Below are positions 137-43,755 of a stretch of 64,000 bases of DNA, piece after piece. The stretch's first letter is position 1. Each line of letters opens with the position of its first letter. Source of the stretch: Auanema rhodensis (Eukaryota > Animalia > Nematoda). Below the pieces are notes generated by a model, which was given only the letters and a program-made list of their open reading frames with translations, was not told the origin of the DNA and ran no database searches. A program made the position numbers and the translations under genes. The DNA is taken from assembly GCA_964057225.1 (NCBI GenBank), contig OZ059896.1, positions 18,662,001 to 18,726,000 on the forward strand, read 5' to 3'.

Positions 137-432
137 GTTTCAAAAAAATCATTACCTGATAGTTTACATGTTTTATTCTGTATTATCTCATACAATTGAA
201 AAAAATACTAGCAGTAAAACAAATGCAGTGATATTATTCTCGAGAATGTTCCTATTCAGAGTGAGAAAATATCTACAATTTCCCGAAGGTTTTCTCATAA
301 GGTACTAAAATAAAAGTATTATTTCATATTATTATTTTTTCAGACCTAGAATCGATAAAAAAAAATCAACTACATTTTAGTGAGTTACTGGGTTGGGTTA
401 TACAAATTGTCTAATTAGAATGCGATTTACAT

Positions 433-505
433 GGCCTTGTGGCCTAATGGATAAGGCGTCGGACTTCGGATCCGAAGATTGTAGGTTCGAGTCCTGCCAG
501 GGTCG
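433..505 (+). tRNA. tRNA-Arg(TCG), consensus copy (representative of most units)
   Basis: Full cloverleaf: acceptor GGCCTTG/CAGGGTC, D stem GCCT/AGGC, anticodon stem TCGGA/TCCGA with loop CT-TCG-GA, T stem GTAGG/CCTGC with loop TTCGAGT. A and B boxes intact; no encoded CCA (eukaryotic type). Confidence 0.97.
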
Positions 506-33961: not shown

Positions 33962-33966
33962 ATCGA
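33962..33966. other. Target-site duplication ATCGA (left copy)
   Basis: Removing the element and one ATCGA restores the array spacer gacctagaATCGAtgaaaaaaatcaactgc, as seen at about 31690-31720. Confidence 0.95.
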
Positions 33967-34034
33967 TGTGGCGTTATACCACAAGTGTATAGTATGGTTG
34001 GAAGTAAAACACAAAGCAAATATGTAGAAAAGGG

Positions 34035-34040
34035 TTTATT
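34035..34040 (-). promoter_or_regulatory. Probable polyadenylation signal AATAAA in the 3' LTR
   Basis: TTTATT on + strand, about 70 nt from the LTR 3' end. Confidence 0.55.
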
Positions 34041-34216
34041 GATGAATTAACAAGACAAGCACGGAATAAAATCACTGACTGCGAACGTTGAAAAAGTAAG
34101 ACTGATCTCTTCTCGTGGGCGGTCGTCAGCCTGAAACAAAGAGTTAGTCATGCCACATGTATAACACAACATGTGGTATGGATAAAAATTACTTAGGAAG
34201 TTAGAAGAAAGAAGAA

Positions 34217-34220
<4 letters not shown>

Positions 34221-34264
<44 letters not shown>
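34221..34264. repeat. (GA)22 microsatellite in LTR
   Basis: Direct reading; counterpart (GA)23 at 43637-43682. Confidence 0.95.
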
Positions 34265-34266
<2 letters not shown>

Positions 34267-34332
34267 AGGAGAAACAAATAAAACAATTGTTGAAGATAAA
34301 AAATTATACAAACTCACTCGCTTATCGCGACA

Positions 34333-34340
34333 CTCCCGGC
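34333..34340 (-). other. Short polypurine-tract-like segment (GCCGGGAG) abutting the 3' LTR
   Basis: Minus strand ...cattGCCGGGAG|TG; position-based call, weak purine run. Confidence 0.5.
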
Positions 34341-34362
34341 AATGCGGGAATGAGAAGAAGGC

Positions 34363-34869
34363 CTACAAAGGTCTTTTACGTTTTATATCACCACAAACCA
34401 CTCCATGATGCGTATCCGCCTTACATCTATAGCAGGATACCTCGCAAATCGCTGGATGTTTTTGATTCAAACATCTGATGCATAACCCCAGTTCATGAAG
34501 ACGGAGAGTGCGTTCCGGTGAGGAAGGATAAATCGGACAGGCCGCAGTACGGTGCCCATCAGCTGTCGGTTTATTGCAGAATACACATGAAGCTTTAGGA
34601 GCAGTCTGAATGGTCAAATTGTCTAGTTTCAGATTTAACGAATGTTGAATATTGTCCAGTCGTTCGGATAGATGGTTCACCGCGCTAGCTAGGTGCTCGT
34701 AGAGCCTCTTTTCAAGCACAATTAGTTGCCTCAGATTGGCGGCAGTGTTAGGTAGATGGGAATATTTTTTGAGCTCTTCCTCAAAGGAAGCATTCTCAAT
34801 TATATTCGAGACAATATCTACCATTTTCATGGAATATAGGAGAAACATGAGCTGCATCCTTATATACAT
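34363..34869 (-). CDS. Accessory ORF2: coiled coil + three Cys/His zinc knuckles + basic C-terminus (start uncertain; first ATG at 34869)
   Basis: CVFC-x7-H-x4-C, 18-aa linker, CIRC-x4-H-x3-C, CYRC-x4-HH-x3-C, ending KRKRPL; stop codon 30 nt before the 3' LTR. Confidence 0.8.
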   Translation of the reverse strand: MYIRMQLMFLLYSMKMVDIVSNIIENASFEEELKKYSHLPNTAANLRQLIVLEKRLYEHLASAVNHLSERLDNIQHSLNLKLDNLTIQTAPKASCVFCNKPTADGHRTAACPIYPSSPERTLRLHELGLCIRCLNQKHPAICEVSCYRCKADTHHGVVCGDIKRKRPL

Positions 34870-35165
34870 GTTCACATCTGGACTTTAAACGCTGATTAAC
34901 ATCTATTAGTTTATTGTACAATGGTGTGTTTAGGTTATCTTGTTACAGATACAATGAATTTTAGAGCCTGTACAAAAGGTTATGTGTTATGTAACTGATA
35001 AAAGAAACTTGATACTACCATAAATTGAAAAGAAAGAAAAACAATGATATTGTTTTATTACAATGGTTATATTCGTACATAATGCTTTCTTTTTCTTTTG
35101 TTTCATTATTATTTCAATTTTTAATTTTTAATTTTATCTCCACAAGAAATTCTTCTCTTATGCTT

Positions 35166-38100
35166 TTAAAATCTTTGATCCCGAAATAAGGCTTTTGATT
35201 TTATCCACAGTGTGAATATCCTGGTAGCTATCCATTGTGTGGTTAAGACTGTATTCAAAACTACACAGTACATGATGGGTGTACATGCCACATATCCTAT
35301 GGTGGCGGTTATTGCAACGCCTATCAATATGATTCCCAACTTTGATAAAATTAACTTGAAGATTGGAGCGAAGTCAATGGATTTGGATTCTGTAACCTTA
35401 CTTGAGTCACTTTCGTTTATTTCATCTATGCTTGCTATGTGATGTAATATTCCTTTAATAATGATCTTAATTTTTTTATTGTCGCATGTGGTATAGCATA
35501 ATTCATCAATCTGAGAATTTTCTCTTTTCATTGTTACTTTTGTGATTGCTACTTTTGGAGAGCATTTTATCATGAATACTTCTTTTTGACATTCGATAGA
35601 AATCCATGTTTCTTCTGCCGTAAGGCATTGGAATTCTGCGAATGCACCCTGCCCGCAGGAGTAGCAACCTGATAGTTTTGTCAGGGCAGGTGCGCAAGGC
35701 AAATTGTTGGAGAAAATCACTGAGTTTAAGAATAGGGATGAATCGACCGTAACTAAATTTTCGTCTAAATTCGTAGAGAATGATAACGTGTTATCTTTAG
35801 TTTTAAAGTTTTGGTTAGGAGATTTTATGTCTGATGTATTGGACATTTTTTCAAAAGTAGGGGTATCACACCTACATTTTATTTCATCAAATCTATTGAA
35901 TGTGCAAGGGCAGAATGAGGATACTGTACAGTTATTAAAATGTTTTAATGCTGCTTCCTCTGTTGCACATTGAATTATTCCCTTTGTGTGTATATCCGTA
36001 ATGTACGTGTTTTCTTTGGAGGAAAAAAATAATTTTGTGTACATTTCTGGAGGAGGTTGTGATTGTGATAACGTTGTTATATTGAAAAGTTGTTCACGAT
36101 TTTTCGTGTAAGGTTGTAGAGTGATATTGTAATTATTTTTCTGCTGGAGTAATGTTGTTTCTATATTAAATACGGTTTGGGTGGACCAACTATCACAAGT
36201 ATAGACTTCGTATACTTCCTCAGTGACGGGTATATGCTCTATTTTGTAGAAAAGACAAGGATCTGTCCAAATCATAGGACATGTGTAAAATCTCGCTGAC
36301 GATGTGAAGCAACCTGATTGTGAAGGGAACGTATATGGTTGTAGTTCCTCGATTTTATTATGGAGCGAGTTAGTTTCACATGTTCCGTCACACGAGCCCC
36401 GGTGACGGCATCGTAATATGCTCAATATGTTGACGGTTGTCTGTCTAGTGAAGTATCTAGTATTCTTTTGGCAGACATGTTCAGTATATAGTTTAGTTAT
36501 TTTAAATTGACCAATTTCATGATTAGAATGCGTTATGGTAATGCATAATTGTTTTGTTCCGGGAGAAAATATGATATCTTGACTGTATTCGTGATAACAA
36601 GCTAAGTTGTCATCGCATCGTATGTTAACGAAGTGTTGAACATGAACATCGGAACATGAACTGCAGCTTCCAATACATAAAGCCAAGATGATTGCCAGTA
36701 ACGATGGTAAAGATGTTTGCGACCCTCTAGTAAAGAGAGAGAATTTTGGTGGCTTTCTCGTATGGTTTAAAATAGGGTAAATATGCTTTTGAAAGGTTTC
36801 ATGATCCACAATATTAGCGTCTTGTGTGTTCGTTTGTTTTAATTGCAACGTATCATTGTGGTCTTCTGTTATTTTTTGATCAGTTTCATGATCTTCTTGT
36901 TCGGAGATTGTTTTATGTTTTAATTTCATGATGTTGAGCATGGTTTGAGTGTTTTTGGACCATGTCTTATATCTATATTGGCTGTAGCCCATGCGGCATA
37001 GACAAGAGACTATGAGGGTAACTGCCATAATGGTTATTATCACTGTCCATGTTGCCATTTCTGGGGAGCAATGAGGATTTGCTATAAGTTTTGTGGTGAA
37101 CATGTTAGAGTCCTTGCAACTATTGATTTCTTCGGCATATGTCGAAGTAATTATAATCGGTAATGAAAGGGCTTTCATTATGTCAGCTGCTATTTTTGGG
37201 TTTATTTTATTTTTTCTTTGGTGTGTGGCATAGGACATTTTTAGTGGGAAGGCTTTTATATTTTCCTTCTCAGTGACCTCATCTTGTTCTGTATATTTTG
37301 CTGTTTTCACTGATGATAGTTTTGTTTTATTTTGAGGTCGATCGTTTGTTGCATCCTCATTATTCTCTGTTTCTGGAGTGTATGTATTATCATGTTGAGA
37401 GTTGTCTGATTCATATGCAATATCGTAATTATGGTTGCTATCATTTATGTTATTGTTCTCATGTATTGTTTCATCTGTATGTTCTATATGATGATCGGAG
37501 TGTATGTTGTCTAATACGGTATCAGTATGTGCTATTCTATCTGTTGAGCTATTATTTTCTTGGACTATGTGTGAGTTGTCTTCTATGATTTTGTTGTTGC
37601 TAGTGTTGCATCTTATCTCTAGTGGATAGAGCTGATTGATGGATCGAGTAATTATGTTTCCGTTGCTTGTTGCAACTTTTGCTGAACGTATGTTGCCATC
37701 TGAACTAGTAATTGTTTCAATAATGCGACCTAGTTTCCATGTTCCTCGTGGCGACATGTCGTTTTGTATTATTACTATTTCATCCTTGTGAGGAAAGAGA
37801 TTTGTGTGATTTTTTCTCTTGTTTTTATGTTTGAAAATGTCTTTTAAACTAGTTAGATACTCCTCCTGGAAACGTGTCCAGAATTTAGACGCTGAGTCTT
37901 CTGATAACTGAAGAGCTTCTAGCGCTTGTTCTGTCGATTGAATCGTTTGGATATCGCTGTGAATATCGAATATATGAGTGTTATCATTGTTTTCTGGTAA
38001 TGAAAACTTTATTGCTGATGTTAAAAAATCAATTGGTCTTATGGGTAAAGCATCTAAATTAACTGGGTGTGGATGAGTGAGTGGGCGTGTATTAATTATG

Positions 38101-41100
38101 GCTTCTATTTTTACAATAGCTGTGTGTAAATCATCTAGTGACATTTGACTAGGAACGAAGCATTTTTTGAGGGATGATTTGGTGACAACTAAGCGTTCCC
38201 AACAACCTCCTTTCCAAGGAGATAGCGGAGTGTTGTATATCCATTTAATTTTTCTTTGAGCTAATGTGTTTAGTATGCTACTTTCATTGTAATCCGAGGT
38301 TTTTTCAAGGGTTTCTAATATTTTTGAGCTCAGAATAAAGTTTCCTGCGCAGTCACTGCGCATAATTTCTGGAGTACCTCTGCGTGAAATAAATCTATTA
38401 AATGCATTCATAAAGGCAACTGTGGATTGATTGGTGACTACCTCTAAGTGAACCGCTCTAGTTGTCATGCATGTAAACAGACAAATATGGACTTTAGACC
38501 CATTTCGAAGGGTGAAGGGGCCCATAAGATCACACCCTGTTGAAAAGAATGCTCTTGTAAGAATTGCTCTGTCTTTTGGTAGCGATGGCATATCTGGTAA
38601 TTCATAAGGATGTGATTGAAATCTTTTACATGTCACACAGTTTTTCAATGTTTGCTTAATGACTCCGGTTATTTTTGGTATATAGAACTTTTGTCTGAGT
38701 TGAATAAGCGTGAAATTTTTGCCTTGATGATTATTATCTTTGTGTATTTTGTTGATCAGTTTTTTAACTATGGGGTTTGTTTTGAGAAGGAATATAGGGT
38801 TTTTTGTCTCTTCGGGAAGAAGAGTATTTTGTAAACGACTTCTTACGCGATAAATGTCCCATGTATCTTTGAAGAATTTTAAATTTATATTTCTTTGCTG
38901 TAGCTCATCGAGGCTCATATTAGATTGGCTGTTACTGATCAAAATATTTTCAATTATGTTGATGTCTTCAACAGTATTCGTGTCTGTTGATGTGAGATGT
39001 TTTATTTTTTGCAACTTGTTGGCGTTGTTAGGATGGACTTTAAGAAACCATTTTTTGAATAATTTTCCTACGGTTGTCATTGTTTTGATCACATCATCAT
39101 AGTTTTCACGAATGTTCCAAATATCATCGGTTGGAAGATTGTCTATAATTATGTGGACCACATTGTGATGCTCCGATTCTGATTCTGCGTTATTCCTGTT
39201 AGAGTTCTTAGGCGAGCCGAATGATGTCAGAGGGTTATGAGCGGAAAGTGTAGTTAACCAATGTGGACCCTTTATCCAGTCGGAATCTTGTAGTTTCTCG
39301 ATGTCTGCACCTCGGGATCCGATGTCTGCAGTATTGTACGAGGTTTGTACATGATGTAATTCTACATTGCAACATACTTGTTTGATTTGGTGTAGCTGTT
39401 TATTTATAATGTTTGTTTGATTTTTAATGAACAGTGGGAGGGATTTTAGAGAAATAATCCATGATAGCGCGATGTTGCTATCGCTTACAATGTTGACTTT
39501 TGCCACTTTCGGGCATATGGTTACAATAGCTAATGCCATTCGTACTGCTAAGCGGATGGCTAATAATTCTAATCGAGGAATTGTGGTCTTATTTTTGGGT
39601 GCTATGCGGGATTTACCGTTGAGCAGAGAACTAATCTGCTCGTTTGTTTGGAAATATGAACATGCGGCCATGGCTTGGTTGCTTGCGTCAGCAAAGACCC
39701 ATAACTGTGTTTTATGTTCAGAGAATTTAAAATATCTTTTCATGGTCAATTGCTGATTGTTAATGTGATTAATATGTTGTTCCCATTGTTTGATATTATC
39801 TGATTCAATGGGTTGGTCCCATGATAATTTTGTGTTTATGATTTCTCGCAAGATAAGTTTGAGAGGTAACAGTAATGGTGCTGCTAATCCAATGGGATCA
39901 AATATTGAGTGTAGCTGACTGAGTAGAATTCTCTTGGTGTAACTTGTGTGAGTCGTTGTTATTTTTATTGGGATAATGAAGGAGTCGTGTTCTTTATTAA
40001 AAGATATGCCAAGTATTTTGGTTGTCATGTTCGGATATCTGTCTTCTTCAGGAAGGTTCTGTATTACTTGTTCGTCGTTTGACAAGAATTCGCGAACATG
40101 CATGTTTATTTCTGTAAATAGTTTTTGGGTTTCTTTACATTTCTTTATAGCTTCTGCTGTTGTATTTGCTGTAAGAATGATATTGTCAACGTATAAGTTG
40201 TTCAGTATTTCCATAGCTAATGGGTTGTCTACTTTTGATTCTAAGAACCATTTTATGCCCATGTTCAATACGCTGGGGGATGCAGTGATACCGAACGGTA
40301 ATCTGTTGAATCGAAGGGTTATGATATTGTTGTGAGATATTGGGTATTCTTTGTTTTTTATCCAAAAGAATTTGCATAGATTTTTGTGATTCTCTGTCAG
40401 TTGTATTTGTAAAAATGCGGCTTTGATATCGCATGTTATTAATATTGGTCTTGTTCTGCAGGAGATCATGATGTCGTGTATATATGTGATAAATGATCGT
40501 CCTGTGTGTATTATCTCATTCAACGACGGGCTGTCTTTCTGTTTAGCGGAGGCGTCAAAAACGATTCTGAGAGGGTTAGCCTTGCTGGGCTTCCAAACCC
40601 CATGGTGGGGCATATAAAACTCTAAAGGCTCCTGGTGATTGTTGGGAATTTGTTCGACAATGTTATCTTTGAGGTAACTTTCAATGGTTGTAGTATAGTG
40701 TGAGAGCATTTCTGGATTGTGCAGTAACTTTCGCCATAGGGATACGAATCTATGGTACGCGGGCATTTTGTTGTTTTTAAGATTTTTGAAGTTATTTTTT
40801 AACGGGAACGGTGCAATAATACGGTTGTTCTCAATTTTTATATCTTTTGAGTATTCTTCATAGTAATCAATAGTGCGGTCTGCGTTGGCATTTTCTGTAT
40901 TGATGCCGATAGAATCCAGTTCAAACAGATTAGTGAGGAGTTCTTTATGAGAGGTTTCTTTTGTTATTTCTTCTACTGTAGAGCATAATATTACTTCTTG
41001 TTGTGTATTATCATCGGGAAGAGGAGCTTCTCCATGTATCATGTGGCCGAATACCGAATTTTTCAATCTCATACGCGAGGGGAGTTCGGTTTCTTCGTTT

Positions 41101-43094
41101 AAATGCATGAACAGTTTGTATCTATCCATACCTATCAGTATATCCGGAGTAAATGATTCTCCGTTTGTTTGTGGATTGGCTAATTTTATTTTTCTTGTCT
41201 TTATAAATTTCAAGTCTTCTTTAGATAGTTTTGGACAACGTATGGGTGTGGTTAACATGGGTTTGGTGAATAGTTTTGTTACGATAAGGGATCCACTTGA
41301 GGTTCCAATAATTACCTTTACGTCCTGAACTTCGTGCGTTTCGGACAATGCTCCGATACCGTAAAAGGTTTTCTTTTGAGAACCAAGGATGGGCAATCCT
41401 AACTTAGTGGATAAGTCCTTGGATATAAAAGATCTCATGGATCCTTCATCTATGAGCATGCGTACTTGCTCATATTTTTTACTATTGTGGTTGTATATGT
41501 TCGCCATTGCTGTTCGTAATATTACTTGACTTTCTTCAATATTATGGGTGTCGGCAATGTGATTAAGCGATACTGGTGCATTAAGTGCCTCAGTAGGGAT
41601 TCGATTATTAGTGTCAGAGTCTTGTTTATATTCTGTTGTTTTTTTATTCAATAATTCTTCTGTGGTGATCAGTAAAGCCTGATCTTTTTTAATTGTGGGA
41701 GTTTCTTTATCTTTTTGGATATTTTGTACACTTTTTCTTCCTTGTGAGCACAAGGCGGAATTATGATCTCCTTGGCAATTGCGACATTTTTGTTTTCTGC
41801 ATTCCGAACTTTTGTGTTTATCGGAAAAGCAAATCCAACAGATGGCCTTTCCGCGAATGCGGTACCTTCTTTTCTCTGGTGTTTCAAATGTGGTGCATTG
41901 ATAAAAACGATGCTCGGATGAGTCGCAAAAGACACATGGCCAAGTTTGGGTTTTCCGTTGTTCTGCAGTGCTGTCTTTATGTGAAACAGATGTGACATTG
42001 TCTTTGTGATTTCGAAACTTTTGTTCATGACTATTTCTTGTTTGTTCTTTTAGAATAAACGAATAGATTTTATGGTCTACAGCTGCCAGCATTTCTTTAG
42101 TAGAATGGTAGTTGTTTGGATGAATTAGAATGTCTTCCACGATGTGGTATGGGAATTTGTTGAGAATCATCGCGGTACACATTTCGCGGGATACTGTAGC
42201 TCCGGCTGCTTCAATTTGCCTGATAAGTGCCTTGGTTTCTCCAAATGTTTCTTTGCATGCTTTTGCATTATTGCTTGCAAATCTCAAATTATGTAGTTGT
42301 GTTAAAAGAGAGTTGATATCCGACGAATAGTCTCCAAATTCAGAAACTAATGCTTCACGCATGAGCTCATAATTTTGAGCAGAGGGTTCTATTCCTCTGA
42401 TTGCTATTTGTGAATTGCCTTTGAGGCTTTCACAGAGTAGGTTTACCTTTTCTAAGGTTGTAAACTGTTCATTATCATGAACACGTCTATCAAAACGGCC
42501 CCAGAATGATTTGAAGTTCTCTGGTTTGCCATCAAATGTAGGTAGCGACATCGCTGGTTTTTGGATGCTAGTTTGTTGGATGTGTAGGAATGACTTGATA
42601 ATTTCCAGAAATTGATCATTCGATTTGTTTTCTGTTTCATTGTTTTCTGTTGAGCAATTGCTGTTGTGCTCAGATTCATTCTTATGAAGCGTTTTTCTCA
42701 GCTTTCTAAGTATGCGTTCGGCTTTCATGATGTGTTCGTCAAGCTCAATAATGGCGTTTTGAACCTTTTTAATGTTGGGTTCAAAGTCTTCATCGGATGT
42801 GAAGGCGATGTACTGTTCGTCTAATGCTTTACGAAGCGTTTTGTCTGATGCTTCGTAAAATTTTTGGAATTTTTTCTCGTTATCTTGATGATTTTTCAAC
42901 GATTCTTTGAATTGGTGTTGGACTTTTGTCCAGCGAATGATAAGGCAAGAGAGGGTTTCCTCTTCTTCCTCAGTGTGGAAGTCGCAATCTACCAGAATAC
43001 CAGGAAGGTCCTTCACTTCCATCTCGTATCGTGTAAGCAGTTCTCCAAGAAACTGGTTAGATTGTTTGATATGATTGACAAAAAGGAGTGACAT
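35166..43094 (-). CDS. Gag-protease-RT-RNaseH-integrase-Env polyprotein (2642 aa)
   Basis: Gag LPTFDG..F..FW..F (DUF1759-like) and three CCHC knuckles (about 41750-41936); protease LIDEGSMRSFI (about 41450); RT DIKAAF, RLPFG, YVDN (about 40190); RNase H FADAS, TIPRLELLA; integrase HHCC, CDLMGP, SDCAGNF, GGCWERL; C-terminal WKLGRI..DG.IRSA.V; Cys-rich Gc-like ectodomain plus TM. Confidence 0.97.
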   Translation of the reverse strand: MSLLFVNHIKQSNQFLGELLTRYEMEVKDLPGILVDCDFHTEEEEETLSCLIIRWTKVQHQFKESLKNHQDNEKKFQKFYEASDKTLRKALDEQYIAFTSDEDFEPNIKKVQNAIIELDEHIMKAERILRKLRKTLHKNESEHNSNCSTENNETENKSNDQFLEIIKSFLHIQQTSIQKPAMSLPTFDGKPENFKSFWGRFDRRVHDNEQFTTLEKVNLLCESLKGNSQIAIRGIEPSAQNYELMREALVSEFGDYSSDINSLLTQLHNLRFASNNAKACKETFGETKALIRQIEAAGATVSREMCTAMILNKFPYHIVEDILIHPNNYHSTKEMLAAVDHKIYSFILKEQTRNSHEQKFRNHKDNVTSVSHKDSTAEQRKTQTWPCVFCDSSEHRFYQCTTFETPEKRRYRIRGKAICWICFSDKHKSSECRKQKCRNCQGDHNSALCSQGRKSVQNIQKDKETPTIKKDQALLITTEELLNKKTTEYKQDSDTNNRIPTEALNAPVSLNHIADTHNIEESQVILRTAMANIYNHNSKKYEQVRMLIDEGSMRSFISKDLSTKLGLPILGSQKKTFYGIGALSETHEVQDVKVIIGTSSGSLIVTKLFTKPMLTTPIRCPKLSKEDLKFIKTRKIKLANPQTNGESFTPDILIGMDRYKLFMHLNEETELPSRMRLKNSVFGHMIHGEAPLPDDNTQQEVILCSTVEEITKETSHKELLTNLFELDSIGINTENANADRTIDYYEEYSKDIKIENNRIIAPFPLKNNFKNLKNNKMPAYHRFVSLWRKLLHNPEMLSHYTTTIESYLKDNIVEQIPNNHQEPLEFYMPHHGVWKPSKANPLRIVFDASAKQKDSPSLNEIIHTGRSFITYIHDIMISCRTRPILITCDIKAAFLQIQLTENHKNLCKFFWIKNKEYPISHNNIITLRFNRLPFGITASPSVLNMGIKWFLESKVDNPLAMEILNNLYVDNIILTANTTAEAIKKCKETQKLFTEINMHVREFLSNDEQVIQNLPEEDRYPNMTTKILGISFNKEHDSFIIPIKITTTHTSYTKRILLSQLHSIFDPIGLAAPLLLPLKLILREIINTKLSWDQPIESDNIKQWEQHINHINNQQLTMKRYFKFSEHKTQLWVFADASNQAMAACSYFQTNEQISSLLNGKSRIAPKNKTTIPRLELLAIRLAVRMALAIVTICPKVAKVNIVSDSNIALSWIISLKSLPLFIKNQTNIINKQLHQIKQVCCNVELHHVQTSYNTADIGSRGADIEKLQDSDWIKGPHWLTTLSAHNPLTSFGSPKNSNRNNAESESEHHNVVHIIIDNLPTDDIWNIRENYDDVIKTMTTVGKLFKKWFLKVHPNNANKLQKIKHLTSTDTNTVEDINIIENILISNSQSNMSLDELQQRNINLKFFKDTWDIYRVRSRLQNTLLPEETKNPIFLLKTNPIVKKLINKIHKDNNHQGKNFTLIQLRQKFYIPKITGVIKQTLKNCVTCKRFQSHPYELPDMPSLPKDRAILTRAFFSTGCDLMGPFTLRNGSKVHICLFTCMTTRAVHLEVVTNQSTVAFMNAFNRFISRRGTPEIMRSDCAGNFILSSKILETLEKTSDYNESSILNTLAQRKIKWIYNTPLSPWKGGCWERLVVTKSSLKKCFVPSQMSLDDLHTAIVKIEAIINTRPLTHPHPVNLDALPIRPIDFLTSAIKFSLPENNDNTHIFDIHSDIQTIQSTEQALEALQLSEDSASKFWTRFQEEYLTSLKDIFKHKNKRKNHTNLFPHKDEIVIIQNDMSPRGTWKLGRIIETITSSDGNIRSAKVATSNGNIITRSINQLYPLEIRCNTSNNKIIEDNSHIVQENNSSTDRIAHTDTVLDNIHSDHHIEHTDETIHENNNINDSNHNYDIAYESDNSQHDNTYTPETENNEDATNDRPQNKTKLSSVKTAKYTEQDEVTEKENIKAFPLKMSYATHQRKNKINPKIAADIMKALSLPIIITSTYAEEINSCKDSNMFTTKLIANPHCSPEMATWTVIITIMAVTLIVSCLCRMGYSQYRYKTWSKNTQTMLNIMKLKHKTISEQEDHETDQKITEDHNDTLQLKQTNTQDANIVDHETFQKHIYPILNHTRKPPKFSLFTRGSQTSLPSLLAIILALCIGSCSSCSDVHVQHFVNIRCDDNLACYHEYSQDIIFSPGTKQLCITITHSNHEIGQFKITKLYTEHVCQKNTRYFTRQTTVNILSILRCRHRGSCDGTCETNSLHNKIEELQPYTFPSQSGCFTSSARFYTCPMIWTDPCLFYKIEHIPVTEEVYEVYTCDSWSTQTVFNIETTLLQQKNNYNITLQPYTKNREQLFNITTLSQSQPPPEMYTKLFFSSKENTYITDIHTKGIIQCATEEAALKHFNNCTVSSFCPCTFNRFDEIKCRCDTPTFEKMSNTSDIKSPNQNFKTKDNTLSFSTNLDENLVTVDSSLFLNSVIFSNNLPCAPALTKLSGCYSCGQGAFAEFQCLTAEETWISIECQKEVFMIKCSPKVAITKVTMKRENSQIDELCYTTCDNKKIKIIIKGILHHIASIDEINESDSSKVTESKSIDFAPIFKLILSKLGIILIGVAITATIGYVACTPIMYCVVLNTVLTTQWIATRIFTLWIKSKALFRDQRF
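35240..36710 (-). other. Phlebovirus Gc (G2)-like class II fusion glycoprotein domain within the polyprotein
   Basis: Internal signal LPSLLAIILALCIGSCSS, then C...YFTR...RC...GSC...C...GC...CLFY...VYEVYTC.SW...GCYSC..GA...C, and a C-terminal hydrophobic anchor. Matches my recollection of the env in nematode BEL elements. Confidence 0.85.
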
Positions 43095-43367
43095 TTTTGT
43101 TGTAGATGTAGGAATAATGCTTATATTCCTTTTTTGTTTTCTTTTTTCTTTGTTTGTTTGGTGATCACAGTATATGTGAACGTAAGGAAATTGAAACCTC
43201 TGTTTCTAATTTCAGAGTTTGCTTATTGTTCAAGTCTGTTTGGTGTGACTTGACGTGGACTTATGATCGCCACGATTTTTATTAAGTATGTTTTTTGCTC
43301 AAACACGCTTGGTTCGAGTTGTATCTCACCTGCCACGCGGGACTTAAAGCGGCTAAGATCTAAACTA

Positions 43368-43379
43368 GCCGATGCACCA
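43368..43379 (-). promoter_or_regulatory. Primer-binding site complementary to the 3' end of tRNA-Gly(GCC)
   Basis: Minus strand TGGTGCATCGGC, 3 nt after the 5' LTR. The + strand GCCGATGCACCA equals the 3' end of invertebrate tRNA-Gly(GCC) plus CCA. Confidence 0.88.
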
Positions 43380-43382
43380 ATT

Positions 43383-43632
43383 TGTGGCGTTATACCACAA
43401 GTGTATAGTATGGTTGGAAGTAAAACACAAAGCAAATATGTAGAAAAGGGTTTATTGATGAATTAACAAGACAAGCACGGAATAAAATCACTGACTGCGA
43501 ACGTTGAAAAAGTAAGACTGATCTCTTCTCGTGGGCGGTCGTCAGCCTGAAACAAAGAGTTAGTCATGCCACATGTATAACACAACATGTGGTATGGATA
43601 AAAATTACTTAGGAAGTTAGAAGAAAGAAGAA

Positions 43633-43684
<52 letters not shown>

Positions 43685-43750
43685 AGGAGAAACAAATAAA
43701 ACAATTGTTGAAGATAAAAAATTATACAAACTCACTCGCTTATCGCGACA
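43383..43750 (-). repeat. 5' LTR (368 bp)
   Basis: Same as the left LTR except (GA)23; followed on the minus strand by the PBS. Confidence 0.96.
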
Positions 43751-43755
43751 ATCGA
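43751..43755. other. Target-site duplication ATCGA (right copy)
   Basis: Directly follows the LTR end ...cgcgaCA. Confidence 0.95.

What the first reader, a model, noticed from the sequence alone, without database searches (positions are those of the whole stretch)
43310..43379. Retroelement leader complementary to three separate parts of tRNA-Gly(GCC): multipartite PBS or captured tRNA relic
Seen: besides the 12-nt PBS (GCCGATGCACCA, 43368-43379), the + strand carries CTCACCTGCCACGCGGG (43325-43341) and TGGTTCGAGTTGTA (43310-43323). Known: invertebrate tRNA-Gly(GCC) has anticodon arm CTCGCCTGCCACGCGGG (16/17 match, GCC anticodon at 43332-43334) and D arm TGGTTCAGTGGTA, in the same order and over about tRNA length. 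The T arm is replaced and the 5' acceptor strand GCATCGG is absent, so this cannot fold as a tRNA. The single anticodon-arm difference becomes a G:U pair when genomic RNA anneals to the tRNA. Inference: the segment is kept to unfold and clamp the whole primer tRNA (or bind tRNA-Gly fragments) rather than to act as a gene. I recall a tRNA-Gly-like antisense sequence reported in the leader of C. elegans Cer7; this is from memory and should be verified.
Basis: partly seen in the sequence, partly recalled or inferred. Interest (0 to 1): 0.82.

Follow-up and report, generated by a model that had tools for sequence, protein, structure and literature searches.

The report
Primer tRNA copy in retroelement leader
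A young BEL/Pao endogenous retrovirus carries, just behind its primer-binding site, an antisense partial copy of the tRNA-Gly it uses as primer; it probably arose when reverse transcriptase read too far into the primer, and it may now help hold that tRNA in place.

Summary
The host tRNA-Gly(GCC) gene (L006:1472-1542) matches the + strand at 43325-43341 in 16 of 17 bases. The one mismatch gives a G:U pair. It matches 43310-43323 in 12 of 13 bases plus one extra base, in tRNA order, next to the 12-nt PBS (43368-43379). No shuffle of 5000 scored as high. ARAGORN and Rfam do not call it a tRNA.

The host element is an intact 9.8-kb BEL/Pao provirus with a phlebovirus-like env, on the minus strand. 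All three subfamilies (about 45 copies) carry the segment.

Origin: capture of the primer tRNA by reverse-transcriptase read-through is well supported. Other LTR families in this genome hold independent captures of 24 to 73 nt of tRNA-Gly plus CCA right after the LTR.

Function: plausible but unproven. The D block decays freely. The anticodon block shows 2 changes against 5.4 expected (P about 0.1), no better than the non-tRNA linker. However, sister families and a Necator element pair a 10-12-nt Gly PBS with an exact 15-16-nt complement of the tRNA D-arm region in the LTR. An Arg-primed sister lacks it, and so does the focal LTR.

The scan had already noted the LTR site on other DNA of this genome (s1-373174, s1-384106), but not the leader blocks. 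The Cer7 recollection could not be verified.

The parts
43751..43755 (.). Target-site duplication ATCGA (right copy). The left copy is at 33962-33966.
   Evidence: Read directly. The same 5 bases flank both LTR outer ends.
43383..43750 (-). 5' LTR (element sense TGTCGCG...CGCCACA). AATAAA lies about 68 nt before its inner end. It contains a (GA)n run. It has no complement of the tRNA-Gly D arm.
   Evidence: It is identical to the 3' LTR except for a 2-nt difference in (GA)n length. The best match to the tRNA complement scores 12 (z -0.8).
43380..43382 (-). 3-nt spacer (AAT in element sense) between LTR and PBS.
43368..43379 (-). Primer-binding site TGGTGCATCGGC, complementary to the last 12 nt of mature tRNA-Gly(GCC) including CCA.
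   Evidence: It is invariant in 38 copies. RNAduplex gives -23.2 kcal/mol.
43342..43367 (-). 26-nt linker in the place of the tRNA variable loop and T arm, with no convincing tRNA similarity. It can form a short hairpin with an AGAUCU palindrome in the loop.
   Evidence: It has 5 changes in 26 sites among 38 copies. The hairpin is not better than shuffles (z -0.6).
43325..43341 (-). Complement of the whole anticodon stem-loop of tRNA-Gly(GCC): 16 of 17 bases, or 17 of 17 pairs counting one G:U.
   Evidence: -38.2 kcal/mol. It has 2 changes in 17 sites among 38 copies.
43310..43323 (-). Degenerate complement of tRNA-Gly positions 8-20 (D-arm region): 12 of 13 bases plus one bulged base in subfamily A, less in subfamilies B and C.
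   Evidence: -11.7 kcal/mol; 7 changes in 14 sites.
43095..43309 (-). Rest of the leader up to the gag start codon, with no tRNA similarity.
35166..43094 (-). Single 2642-aa gag-pol-env open reading frame of a BEL/Pao element of the Tas/Atlas kind.
   Evidence: DUF1759, Peptidase_A17, Integrase_H2C2, DUF5641, Phlebovirus_G2 and Phlebo_G2_C. The closest outside relatives are in strongylid nematodes.
34363..34875 (-). 170-aa open reading frame between env and the 3' LTR. Not studied here.
Evidence: no Pfam match.
33967..34332 (-). 3' LTR.

Best explanation
The 70-nt stretch is a reverse-transcribed partial copy of the element's own primer, mature tRNA-Gly(GCC). It lies antisense in the genomic RNA, directly downstream of the PBS.

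Origin (my odds about 0.8). During plus-strand strong-stop synthesis in a founder element, reverse transcriptase did not stop in the T loop. It copied on through the anticodon and D arms, and the product was built into the provirus. All descendants (subfamilies A, B and C) inherited it. The T-arm part was later replaced by a 26-nt linker, and the D part is decaying.

Present role (my odds about 0.5). The 17-nt anticodon-arm complement acts as a second annealing site. Together with the short 12-nt PBS it holds an unfolded tRNA-Gly on the leader. This is the job that a D-arm complement in the LTR appears to do in the sister families.

Shown: the sequence identity to the host tRNA, the colinearity, the family-wide presence, independent captures elsewhere in the genome, second sites in relatives, and the gain in predicted binding energy.

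Inferred: the read-through event itself, and any effect on priming.
For: Identity and order of the blocks relative to the host tRNA, contiguous with a CCA-containing PBS.

Independent captures next to LTRs of other families:
- L098 holds 73 nt of the tRNA-Gly complement.
- L088 and L091 hold 41-42 nt, ending in the anticodon.
- L087 holds 45 nt and L081 about 35 nt.
- L061 and L065 hold a few extra bases.
- Three of these copies have T at tRNA position 58, as expected from misreading of m1A58.

All 38 aligned copies of the focal family carry the segment.

Second sites against the same tRNA in relatives with short PBS:
- Family 2b: 16 of 16 bases in 49 LTRs.
- Family 3a: 15 of 16 bases in 25 LTRs.
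- Family 3b: 15 of 15 bases in both LTRs of at least 6 elements.
- Necator americanus: 16 of 16 bases.
- z scores run from 6.4 to 8.7.

Specificity: family 2a shares a 5S rRNA-array insertion context with 2b, uses an 18-nt tRNA-Arg PBS, and has no Gly site.

The focal LTR has no such site.

Predicted net binding of tRNA to leader is -24.1 kcal/mol, against -12.3 +/- 2.7 when the post-PBS leader is shuffled.
Against: - The T arm, which read-through must copy first, is missing from the family, and I cannot say how it was replaced.
- The D block is not conserved (7 changes in 14 sites, against 0.32 per site in the distal leader).
- The anticodon block's quietness is not significant (P about 0.10) and is matched by the linker.
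- Family divergence (at most about 16% in the leader) is too small for a real test.
- No relative between 38% and 80% RT identity exists in the genome.
- Family 4 and a Haemonchus element have 10-12-nt Gly PBSs without any second site, so a short PBS does not strictly need one.
- There are no RNA or cDNA data.
Confidence: 0.45

Rival explanations
1. Same origin, but no present function. The segment is a neutral passenger that the founder happened to carry. It looks well kept only because the family is young.
For: - The D block decays as fast as or faster than the leader.
- The anticodon block (2 changes in 17 sites) is no quieter than the non-tRNA linker (5 in 26), and its deficit is not significant.
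- Sporadic captures in other families show that such insertions arise without any need.
- Family 4 and the Haemonchus element manage with a short PBS alone.
Against: - Uniform neutral decay does not explain a T-arm part that is unrecognisable next to an anticodon arm at 16 of 17 bases.
- The focal family is the only Gly-primed, env-bearing family here without an LTR second site. That fits replacement of one site by another.
- The family is the product of many successful replication rounds, all with the block.
Confidence: 0.38
2. The tRNA-like DNA came from a tRNA-Gly gene, not from the primer RNA. It would have entered by recombination or gene conversion at an insertion site inside a tRNA-Gly array.
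For: - Copies of this family sit in tandem tRNA arrays. 24 of 37 loci have tRNA genes next to the 5' LTR.
- L053 and L058 lie beside genuine tRNA-Gly(GCC) genes.
- L058 has an authentic T arm in place of the linker, most simply by conversion from the gene 58 nt outside its LTR.
Against: - The blocks lie inside the element, in register with a PBS that includes the non-encoded CCA, and antisense to the element, exactly as read-through predicts.
- Conversion needs pre-existing homology on both sides.
- The captures in other families abut the LTR with CCA. One carries an inverted leader duplication typical of aberrant strand transfer.
Confidence: 0.08
3. The antisense blocks are a landing site or decoy for tRNA-Gly fragments (5' halves or 5' tRFs). 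The host could use them to silence the element, or the element could use them to soak up such fragments.
For: The blocks are complementary to tRNA positions 8-42, the part contained in 5' fragments. Small RNAs from tRNAs are known to target PBS regions of LTR elements (PMC7472051, PMC12853362; titles and abstracts seen).
Against: - There are no small-RNA data for this host.
- A silencing target should be lost, not carried by about 45 young copies.
- 5' halves end in the anticodon loop and would not cover the 3' strand of the stem, which is fully matched.
Confidence: 0.05
4. Chance resemblance, or a degenerate tRNA gene or tRNA-derived SINE that happens to lie there.
For: None beyond the fact that tRNA-like DNA is very abundant in this genome.
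Against: - None of 5000 shuffles reached the observed score.
- The segment is present in every copy at the same place.
- There is no tRNA call by ARAGORN or Rfam.
- There is no B box and no 5' acceptor strand.
Confidence: 0.01

Closest known systems
Ty1 (yeast): 10-nt PBS plus boxes downstream that pair with the T and D arms of tRNAiMet (Friant et al. 1996 and 1998, as cited in PMC5371799)
   Same: A short PBS. Extra complementarity to the primer lies a few tens of nucleotides downstream of the PBS in the same RNA. The D-arm region of the tRNA is involved.
   Different: Here the extra site is a colinear copy of the anticodon and D arms, and the T arm is not paired. The primer is tRNA-Gly(GCC). 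The element is BEL/Pao, not copia-like. The requirement for priming is not tested.
Ty3 (yeast): bipartite PBS, with 8 nt at the 5' end plus U3 sequences at the 3' end that pair with the T and D arms (Gabus et al. 1998; PMC5371799). Also gypsy, with two tRNA-Lys binding sites at the 5' and 3' ends (PMC1635307).
   Same: This is the best analogue for the sister families and the Necator element. Their second site lies in the LTR near AATAAA, so it is probably present at both RNA ends, and it pairs with the D-arm region.
   Different: The focal family has no LTR site. Its extra site is internal. In gypsy only the 5' site is indispensable.
HIV-1, FIV and RSV: contacts outside the PBS, namely A-rich loop with anticodon, PAS with T arm, and U5 with the TpsiC arm (summarised in PMC5371799)
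   Same: The anticodon region of the primer contacts viral RNA near the PBS.
   Different: Those contacts are 4-8 nt long and sit on an 18-nt PBS. Here the whole 17-nt stem-loop is matched and the PBS is 12 nt.
Read-through of plus-strand strong-stop DNA past m1A58 of the primer (PMC8599865). From memory: retroviral circle junctions that contain tRNA sequence (Colicelli and Goff 1986).
   Same: This is the mechanism I propose for the origin. The sporadic copies L098, L088, L091, L087 and L081 look like its integrated products.
   Different: In HIV such products are described as dead ends. Here one was inherited by a whole family.
copia and Ty5: a half-tRNA primer annealed through the anticodon stem-loop
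   Same: [quoted passage not shown]
   Different: In copia and Ty5 that site abuts the LTR and is the priming site. Here it lies 41 nt from the LTR behind a normal 3'-end PBS, so it cannot define the LTR edge.
Helenus TRIMs: tRNA-derived sequence inside LTRs that serves as a Pol III promoter (PMC10886601)
   Same: A tRNA-derived sequence fixed in an LTR element that no longer folds as a tRNA.
   Different: Helenus has boxes A and B in sense orientation within the LTR, unrelated to the primer. Here the sequence is antisense, in the leader, has no B box, and derives from the primer itself.

Membership tests
Functional tRNA gene | Cloverleaf recognised by tRNA finders; 5' acceptor strand; T arm with B box | tested here: not met
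   ARAGORN lists no tRNA between 33739 and 43831. Rfam gives no tRNA hit at E<=10. The acceptor 5' strand and the T arm are absent.
Canonical LTR-retroelement PBS | Complement of the 3' end of a host tRNA including CCA, 0-5 nt inside the 5' LTR | tested here: met
   The 12-nt match to tRNA-Gly(GCC) plus CCA lies 3 nt from the LTR end CA and is invariant in 38 copies.
Extended or multipartite PBS (Ty1, Ty3, HIV-1, RSV type) | Additional complementarity to the same primer tRNA outside its 3' end | tested here: met
   Pairing of 17 nt and about 13 nt with the anticodon and D arms.
Extended or multipartite PBS (Ty1, Ty3, HIV-1, RSV type) | The extra sites are conserved among related elements beyond the neutral rate | tested here: inconclusive
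   Anticodon block: 2 changes against 5.4 expected, P about 0.10. D block: 7 changes in 14 sites, not conserved. Linker: 5 in 26. In sister families the LTR site is conserved across families and genera.
Extended or multipartite PBS (Ty1, Ty3, HIV-1, RSV type) | The extra sites are needed for tRNA annealing or initiation of minus-strand synthesis | not testable with these tools
   Only predicted energies are available: -24.1 against -12.3 kcal/mol net.
Primer-tRNA read-through capture | tRNA complement colinear with and directly downstream of the PBS, derived from the mature CCA-bearing tRNA | tested here: met
   The order is D, anticodon, (linker), acceptor-CCA over 70 nt, against 67 nt in the tRNA. 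There are precedents in other families.
Primer-tRNA read-through capture | Uninterrupted copy, including the T arm next to the PBS | tested here: not met
   The T arm is replaced by 26 unrelated nt in all subfamilies. The one copy with a T arm (L058) is nested in subfamily A and lies beside a genuine tRNA-Gly gene.
BEL/Pao, env-bearing Tas/Atlas-like lineage | Peptidase_A17, DUF1759 gag, DUF5641, integrase, phlebovirus-type Gc; LTRs with TG...CA; 5-bp target duplication | tested here: met
   The closest relatives are in Haemonchus, Necator and Ancylostoma.
Helenus-type tRNA-derived Pol III promoter | Boxes A and B in sense orientation inside the LTR | tested here: not met
   The segment is in the leader, antisense to the element, and has no B box.

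The most novel reading that the evidence does not exclude
Env-bearing BEL/Pao endogenous retroviruses of nematodes share a two-site primer system that has not been described. It has a short 10-12-nt PBS for the 3' end of tRNA-Gly(GCC), plus a second site of 15 nt or more against the 5' half of the same tRNA. In most families the second site lies in the LTR near the poly(A) signal. In this family it was supplied afresh by a reverse-transcribed copy of the primer. Read-through capture, normally a dead end, would then be a source of new cis-acting replication signals.
Probability: 0.4. Interest if true: 0.75.

Novelty: new variant of a known kind. Interest (0 to 1): 0.62.

Why it matters
Extra contacts between primer tRNA and genomic RNA are established for Ty1, Ty3, HIV-1 and RSV. 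In the literature I could search, nothing is reported for BEL/Pao, the third large group of LTR elements. The main survey of the group does not mention tRNA or PBS at all (PMC3118150).

This genome offers a natural series:
- Families with a short Gly PBS plus an LTR site.
- A sister family that switched to an 18-nt tRNA-Arg PBS and has no such site.
- A family with the extra site in the leader, as a colinear tRNA copy.
- Single copies that preserve read-through products of 24 to 73 nt, some with a possible m1A58 misreading mark.

Together they make two questions testable with short RNA fragments. One is how short-PBS elements secure their primer. The other is whether aberrant reverse-transcription products can seed new regulatory sequence.

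If the segment is only a relic, it is still a clear case of a primer copy inherited by a whole active family.

Tried and rejected
- **Cer7 claim.** Full-text searches for Cer7 with PBS and tRNA found nothing. The Sinbad paper and the Atlas-virus preprint do not discuss primers. Bowen and McDonald 1999 is not held. The claim is unverified, not refuted.
- **Outside relatives.** The Ditylenchus (L105) and Bursaphelenchus (L128) elements use other primers. The Haemonchus placei contig (L126) lacks the 5' end. A Logan contig (L127) has no Gly PBS. The H. contortus element (L129) has a 10-nt Gly PBS and only a 9-mer T-arm match (z 1.7). No close relative of the focal family exists outside this genome at the sensitivity used.
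- **L058 as proof of re-capture.** I first read its authentic T arm as a second read-through that used the anticodon block as homology. I then found a genuine tRNA-Gly gene 58 nt outside its LTR. Gene conversion is now the likelier cause.
- **m1A58 signature.** T at position 58 occurs in three captures, but one array gene (C6:9635558) also has T58. The signature is suggestive only.
- **Leader structure.** The leader RNA is not more structured than shuffles (z -1.0). The linker hairpin is not significant. The one Rfam hit is noise.
- **Decayed LTR site.** Only a TTCTAC 6-mer follows AATAAA in the focal LTR, which is not significant.
- **tRNA-Arg second site in family 2a.** Only a 9-mer was found (z 2.7).
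- **RNA evidence.** No listed run holds the stretch.

Full report
**What is in the window.**
The window is a tandem array of 377-bp units, each with a tRNA-Arg(TCG)-like gene. At 33967-43750 the array is interrupted by a 9.8-kb LTR element on the minus strand.
- The two LTRs (33967-34332 and 43383-43750) are identical except for one GA unit in a microsatellite. They are flanked by a 5-bp duplication, ATCGA.
- One 2642-aa frame (43094 down to 35166) carries DUF1759, Peptidase_A17, integrase, DUF5641 and a phlebovirus-type G2 fusion protein. The element is an env-bearing BEL/Pao element of the Tas/Atlas kind.
- Its nearest outside relatives are in strongylid nematodes, at 38-43% identity in the integrase region.
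- In element sense the 5' LTR ends in CA and is followed by AAT and the PBS TGGTGCATCGGC (43379 down to 43368).

**Check of the observation.**
I recovered the host tRNA-Gly(GCC) gene from the same genome (L006:1472-1542). It is present in hundreds of tandem copies.
- The + strand at 43325-43341 matches its anticodon stem-loop in 16 of 17 bases.
- 43310-43323 matches positions 8-20 in 12 of 13 bases, with one extra base.
- 43368-43379 equals the last 12 nt of the mature tRNA including CCA.
- The order and total length (70 nt against 67) are those of the tRNA.
- The variable loop and T arm are replaced by 26 unrelated bases. The 5' acceptor strand is missing.

With the PBS part of the tRNA removed, the leader still aligns with score 33. 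Shuffles give 13.8 +/- 2.0, and none of 5000 reached 33. Two tRNA-Arg controls score 14 and 16.

The single mismatch gives a G:U pair, and RNAduplex draws a continuous 17-bp helix. ARAGORN and Rfam do not see a tRNA here.

**The family.**
A DNA search and a search for the 12-nt PBS find about 45 copies in the genome. They fall into subfamilies A (97-100% RT identity to the window copy), B (about 90%) and C (about 80%). All carry the segment.

I aligned 38 distinct copies over 42900-43600 and counted parsimony changes on their tree.

| Segment | Changes per site | Count |
|---|---|---|
| gag | 0.35 | |
| distal leader | 0.32 | |
| D block | 0.50 | 7 in 14 |
| anticodon block | 0.12 | 2 in 17 |
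| linker | 0.19 | 5 in 26 |
| PBS | 0 | |
| LTR | 0.60 | |

- The D block differs between the active subfamilies and moves away from the tRNA, so it is not being kept.
- The anticodon block has fewer changes than expected (5.4), but P is only about 0.10. The non-tRNA linker is almost as quiet.
- The family is too young for this test to decide. No relative between 38% and 80% RT identity exists in the genome.

**Primer captures elsewhere in the genome.**
The 12-mer GCCGATGCACCA occurs 88 times. I read all sites outside the focal family.
- Several other LTR families use the same primer, mostly with exactly 12 nt.
- Individual copies of these families carry much more of the tRNA, always as a perfect or near-perfect complement running on from the PBS. 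The lengths are 73 nt in L098, 41-42 nt ending at anticodon positions 34/35 in L088 and L091, 45 nt in L087, about 35 nt in L081, and a few extra bases in L061 and L065.
- L098 also has an inverted duplication of its leader, as expected from a faulty strand transfer.
- Three captures have T at tRNA position 58. This fits misreading of m1A58, the normal stop for plus-strand strong-stop DNA (PMC8599865; PMC4787781, seen). However, one array gene also has T58, so this mark is only suggestive.

These copies show that read-through of the primer, followed by integration of the product, happens in this genome. The focal segment has the same position, orientation and register. I therefore take capture of the primer as its origin (about 0.8). 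The missing T arm remains unexplained.

**The copy L058.**
One copy nested in subfamily A has the authentic variable loop and T arm in place of the linker. I first read this as a second read-through that used the anticodon block as homology. However, a genuine tRNA-Gly(GCC) gene lies 58 nt outside its LTR, in the same orientation. Only two of about 40 copies lie beside such a gene. Conversion by the neighbour is therefore the likelier cause, and I do not count L058 as evidence for function.

**Second sites in relatives.**
An RT search of the genome shows sister families at 35-37% identity (2a, 2b), 28% (3a, 3b) and lower. I fetched their 5' ends and scored them against the tRNA complement with shuffled controls.

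| Element | Gly PBS | Second site against tRNA-Gly | Position | z |
|---|---|---|---|---|
| Family 2b | 10 nt | exact 16-nt complement of positions 12-27 | in the LTR, 78 nt upstream, right after AATAAA | 8.3 |
| Family 3a | 10 nt | 15 of 16 against positions 8-23 | between a TATA box and AATAAA | 6.4 |
| Family 3b | 9 of 10 nt | 15 of 15 against positions 10-24 | same place as 3a | 7.9 |
| Necator americanus element | 12 nt (same as focal) | 16 of 16 against positions 6-21 | 98 nt upstream, after AATAAA | 8.7 |

- Pattern searches find the 2b site in 49 LTRs and the 3a site in 25. They find the 3b site in both LTRs of at least six elements.
- The extents differ from family to family but always follow the tRNA. 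The shared feature is therefore complementarity to the tRNA, not a common motif.
- Family 2a sits in the same kind of 5S rRNA array as 2b. It uses an 18-nt tRNA-Arg(ACG) PBS and has no Gly site. It has no clear Arg site either.
- A family with an 18-nt Gly PBS has only two 9-mers.
- Family 4 and a Haemonchus element have short Gly PBSs without any second site.
- The focal LTR has no site (z -0.8). The focal family's only extra complementarity is the leader segment (z 7.4).

Two earlier first-reader notes on other DNA of this genome had flagged the 16-nt LTR site. I reached it independently and tested it.

**Energetics.**
RNAcofold of a 100-nt leader fragment with the tRNA gives a net gain of -24.1 kcal/mol after paying for both self-structures. 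With the post-PBS part shuffled the gain is -12.3 +/- 2.7. The PBS helix alone is -23.2 kcal/mol, the anticodon block -38.2 and the D block -11.7. The leader on its own is not unusually structured.

**How it most likely works.**
- Shown: the element primes from tRNA-Gly(GCC) through a 12-nt PBS, and the next 58 nt contain a colinear antisense copy of the tRNA's anticodon and D arms.
- Inferred: a founder acquired this copy when plus-strand synthesis ran through the primer. In the genomic RNA the 17-nt block now pairs with the opened anticodon arm of the annealed primer. The 26-nt linker loops out opposite the still-folded T arm. This adds stability to a short PBS, as the LTR sites may do for the sister families.
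- I put the present function at about 0.5 and the neutral-relic reading at about 0.4. The D block contributes little and is probably on its way out.

**Comparison with what is known.**
Extra primer contacts are established for Ty1 (boxes downstream of a 10-nt PBS, pairing with the T and D arms) and for Ty3 (an 8-nt PBS plus U3 sites). They are also known for gypsy (two tRNA-Lys sites) and for HIV-1, FIV and RSV (PMC5371799, PMC1635307).
- The focal arrangement works like Ty1 in layout. It differs in the tRNA parts used, in being a colinear tRNA copy, and in its likely origin.
- The sister families resemble Ty3.
- It is not a Helenus-type promoter (PMC10886601), and it is not a copia/Ty5-type half-tRNA priming site.
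- I found no report of either feature in BEL/Pao. The main survey does not mention primers (PMC3118150).

**Verdict.**
The origin as a captured primer copy is well supported. The function as part of a multipartite PBS is plausible, backed by relatives, and unproven within the family. I class it as a new variant of a known kind, with interest 0.62.

Noticed in passing
L031-L060, L002, L013, L019; window 33962-33966 and 43751-43755: Copies of the focal family sit inside tandem tRNA-gene arrays of many isotypes (Asp, Ser, His, Ala, Arg, Glu, Met, Gly-TCC, Leu, Thr, Gln, Pro). 24 of 37 loci have tRNA genes roughly 5-100 bp from the 5' LTR. The window copy lies about 80 bp upstream of a tRNA-Arg unit. 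This looks like integration targeted to Pol III gene arrays.
   Followed up: partly
L106-L109 (5S rRNA), L110-L112 (tRNA), L113 (SL1 RNA): Sister families are also embedded in small-RNA gene arrays. Families 2a and 2b are in 5S rRNA arrays. Family 3 LTRs interrupt tRNA genes. The 18-nt-PBS family is in SL1-like arrays (below the Rfam gathering score, E 1e-7). SL1 and the closest relatives point to a nematode host.
   Followed up: partly
window 1-33890 and 43757-64000: A 377-bp tandem array holds 144 tRNA-Arg(TCG)-like units, and a few units carry a Gln (TTG) anticodon. Genome-wide there are hundreds of tandem tRNA-Gly(GCC) and tRNA-Arg(ACG) genes.
   Followed up: no
L098:about 400-475 (minus-strand view); L088, L091, L087, L081, L061, L065: These are single copies of other LTR families with 24-73 nt of tRNA-Gly complement plus CCA right after the LTR. 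L098 also has an inverted duplication of its leader. L091 is a tandem LTR-tRNA unit. Two captures end at anticodon positions 34/35. Three have T at position 58.
   Followed up: partly
L058 (G000:C6:about 10264522-10264816): This is the one focal-family copy in which the 26-nt linker is replaced by the authentic variable loop and T arm of tRNA-Gly. A genuine tRNA-Gly(GCC) gene lies 58 nt outside its 5' LTR in the same orientation. Gene conversion by that gene is the probable cause.
   Followed up: yes
L125:2124-2250 (Necator americanus, GCA_031761385.1): A hookworm BEL/Pao-env element has AATAAA, then 11 nt, a 16-nt exact complement of tRNA-Gly positions 6-21, 82 nt, and the same 12-nt PBS. This is the two-site layout in another genus.
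   Followed up: partly
L066 and about 20 similar loci; L064: Two further LTR families of undetermined type have 12-13-nt Gly PBSs. They carry an 11-mer (tRNA positions 5-15, 267 nt upstream) or a 19-nt imperfect match (positions 1-20, 64 nt upstream) in the LTR (z 4.7 and 3.7).
   Followed up: no
window 43342-43371: The last bases of the PBS and the linker can form a 7-bp hairpin whose loop holds the palindrome AGAUCU. This is reminiscent of a dimerisation hairpin but is not significant against shuffles.
   Followed up: partly
window 33967-34332 versus 43383-43750: The two LTRs differ only by one GA unit in an internal (GA)n run. Many copies of the family keep open frames of about 2.6 kaa. The family is therefore very young.
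   Followed up: no
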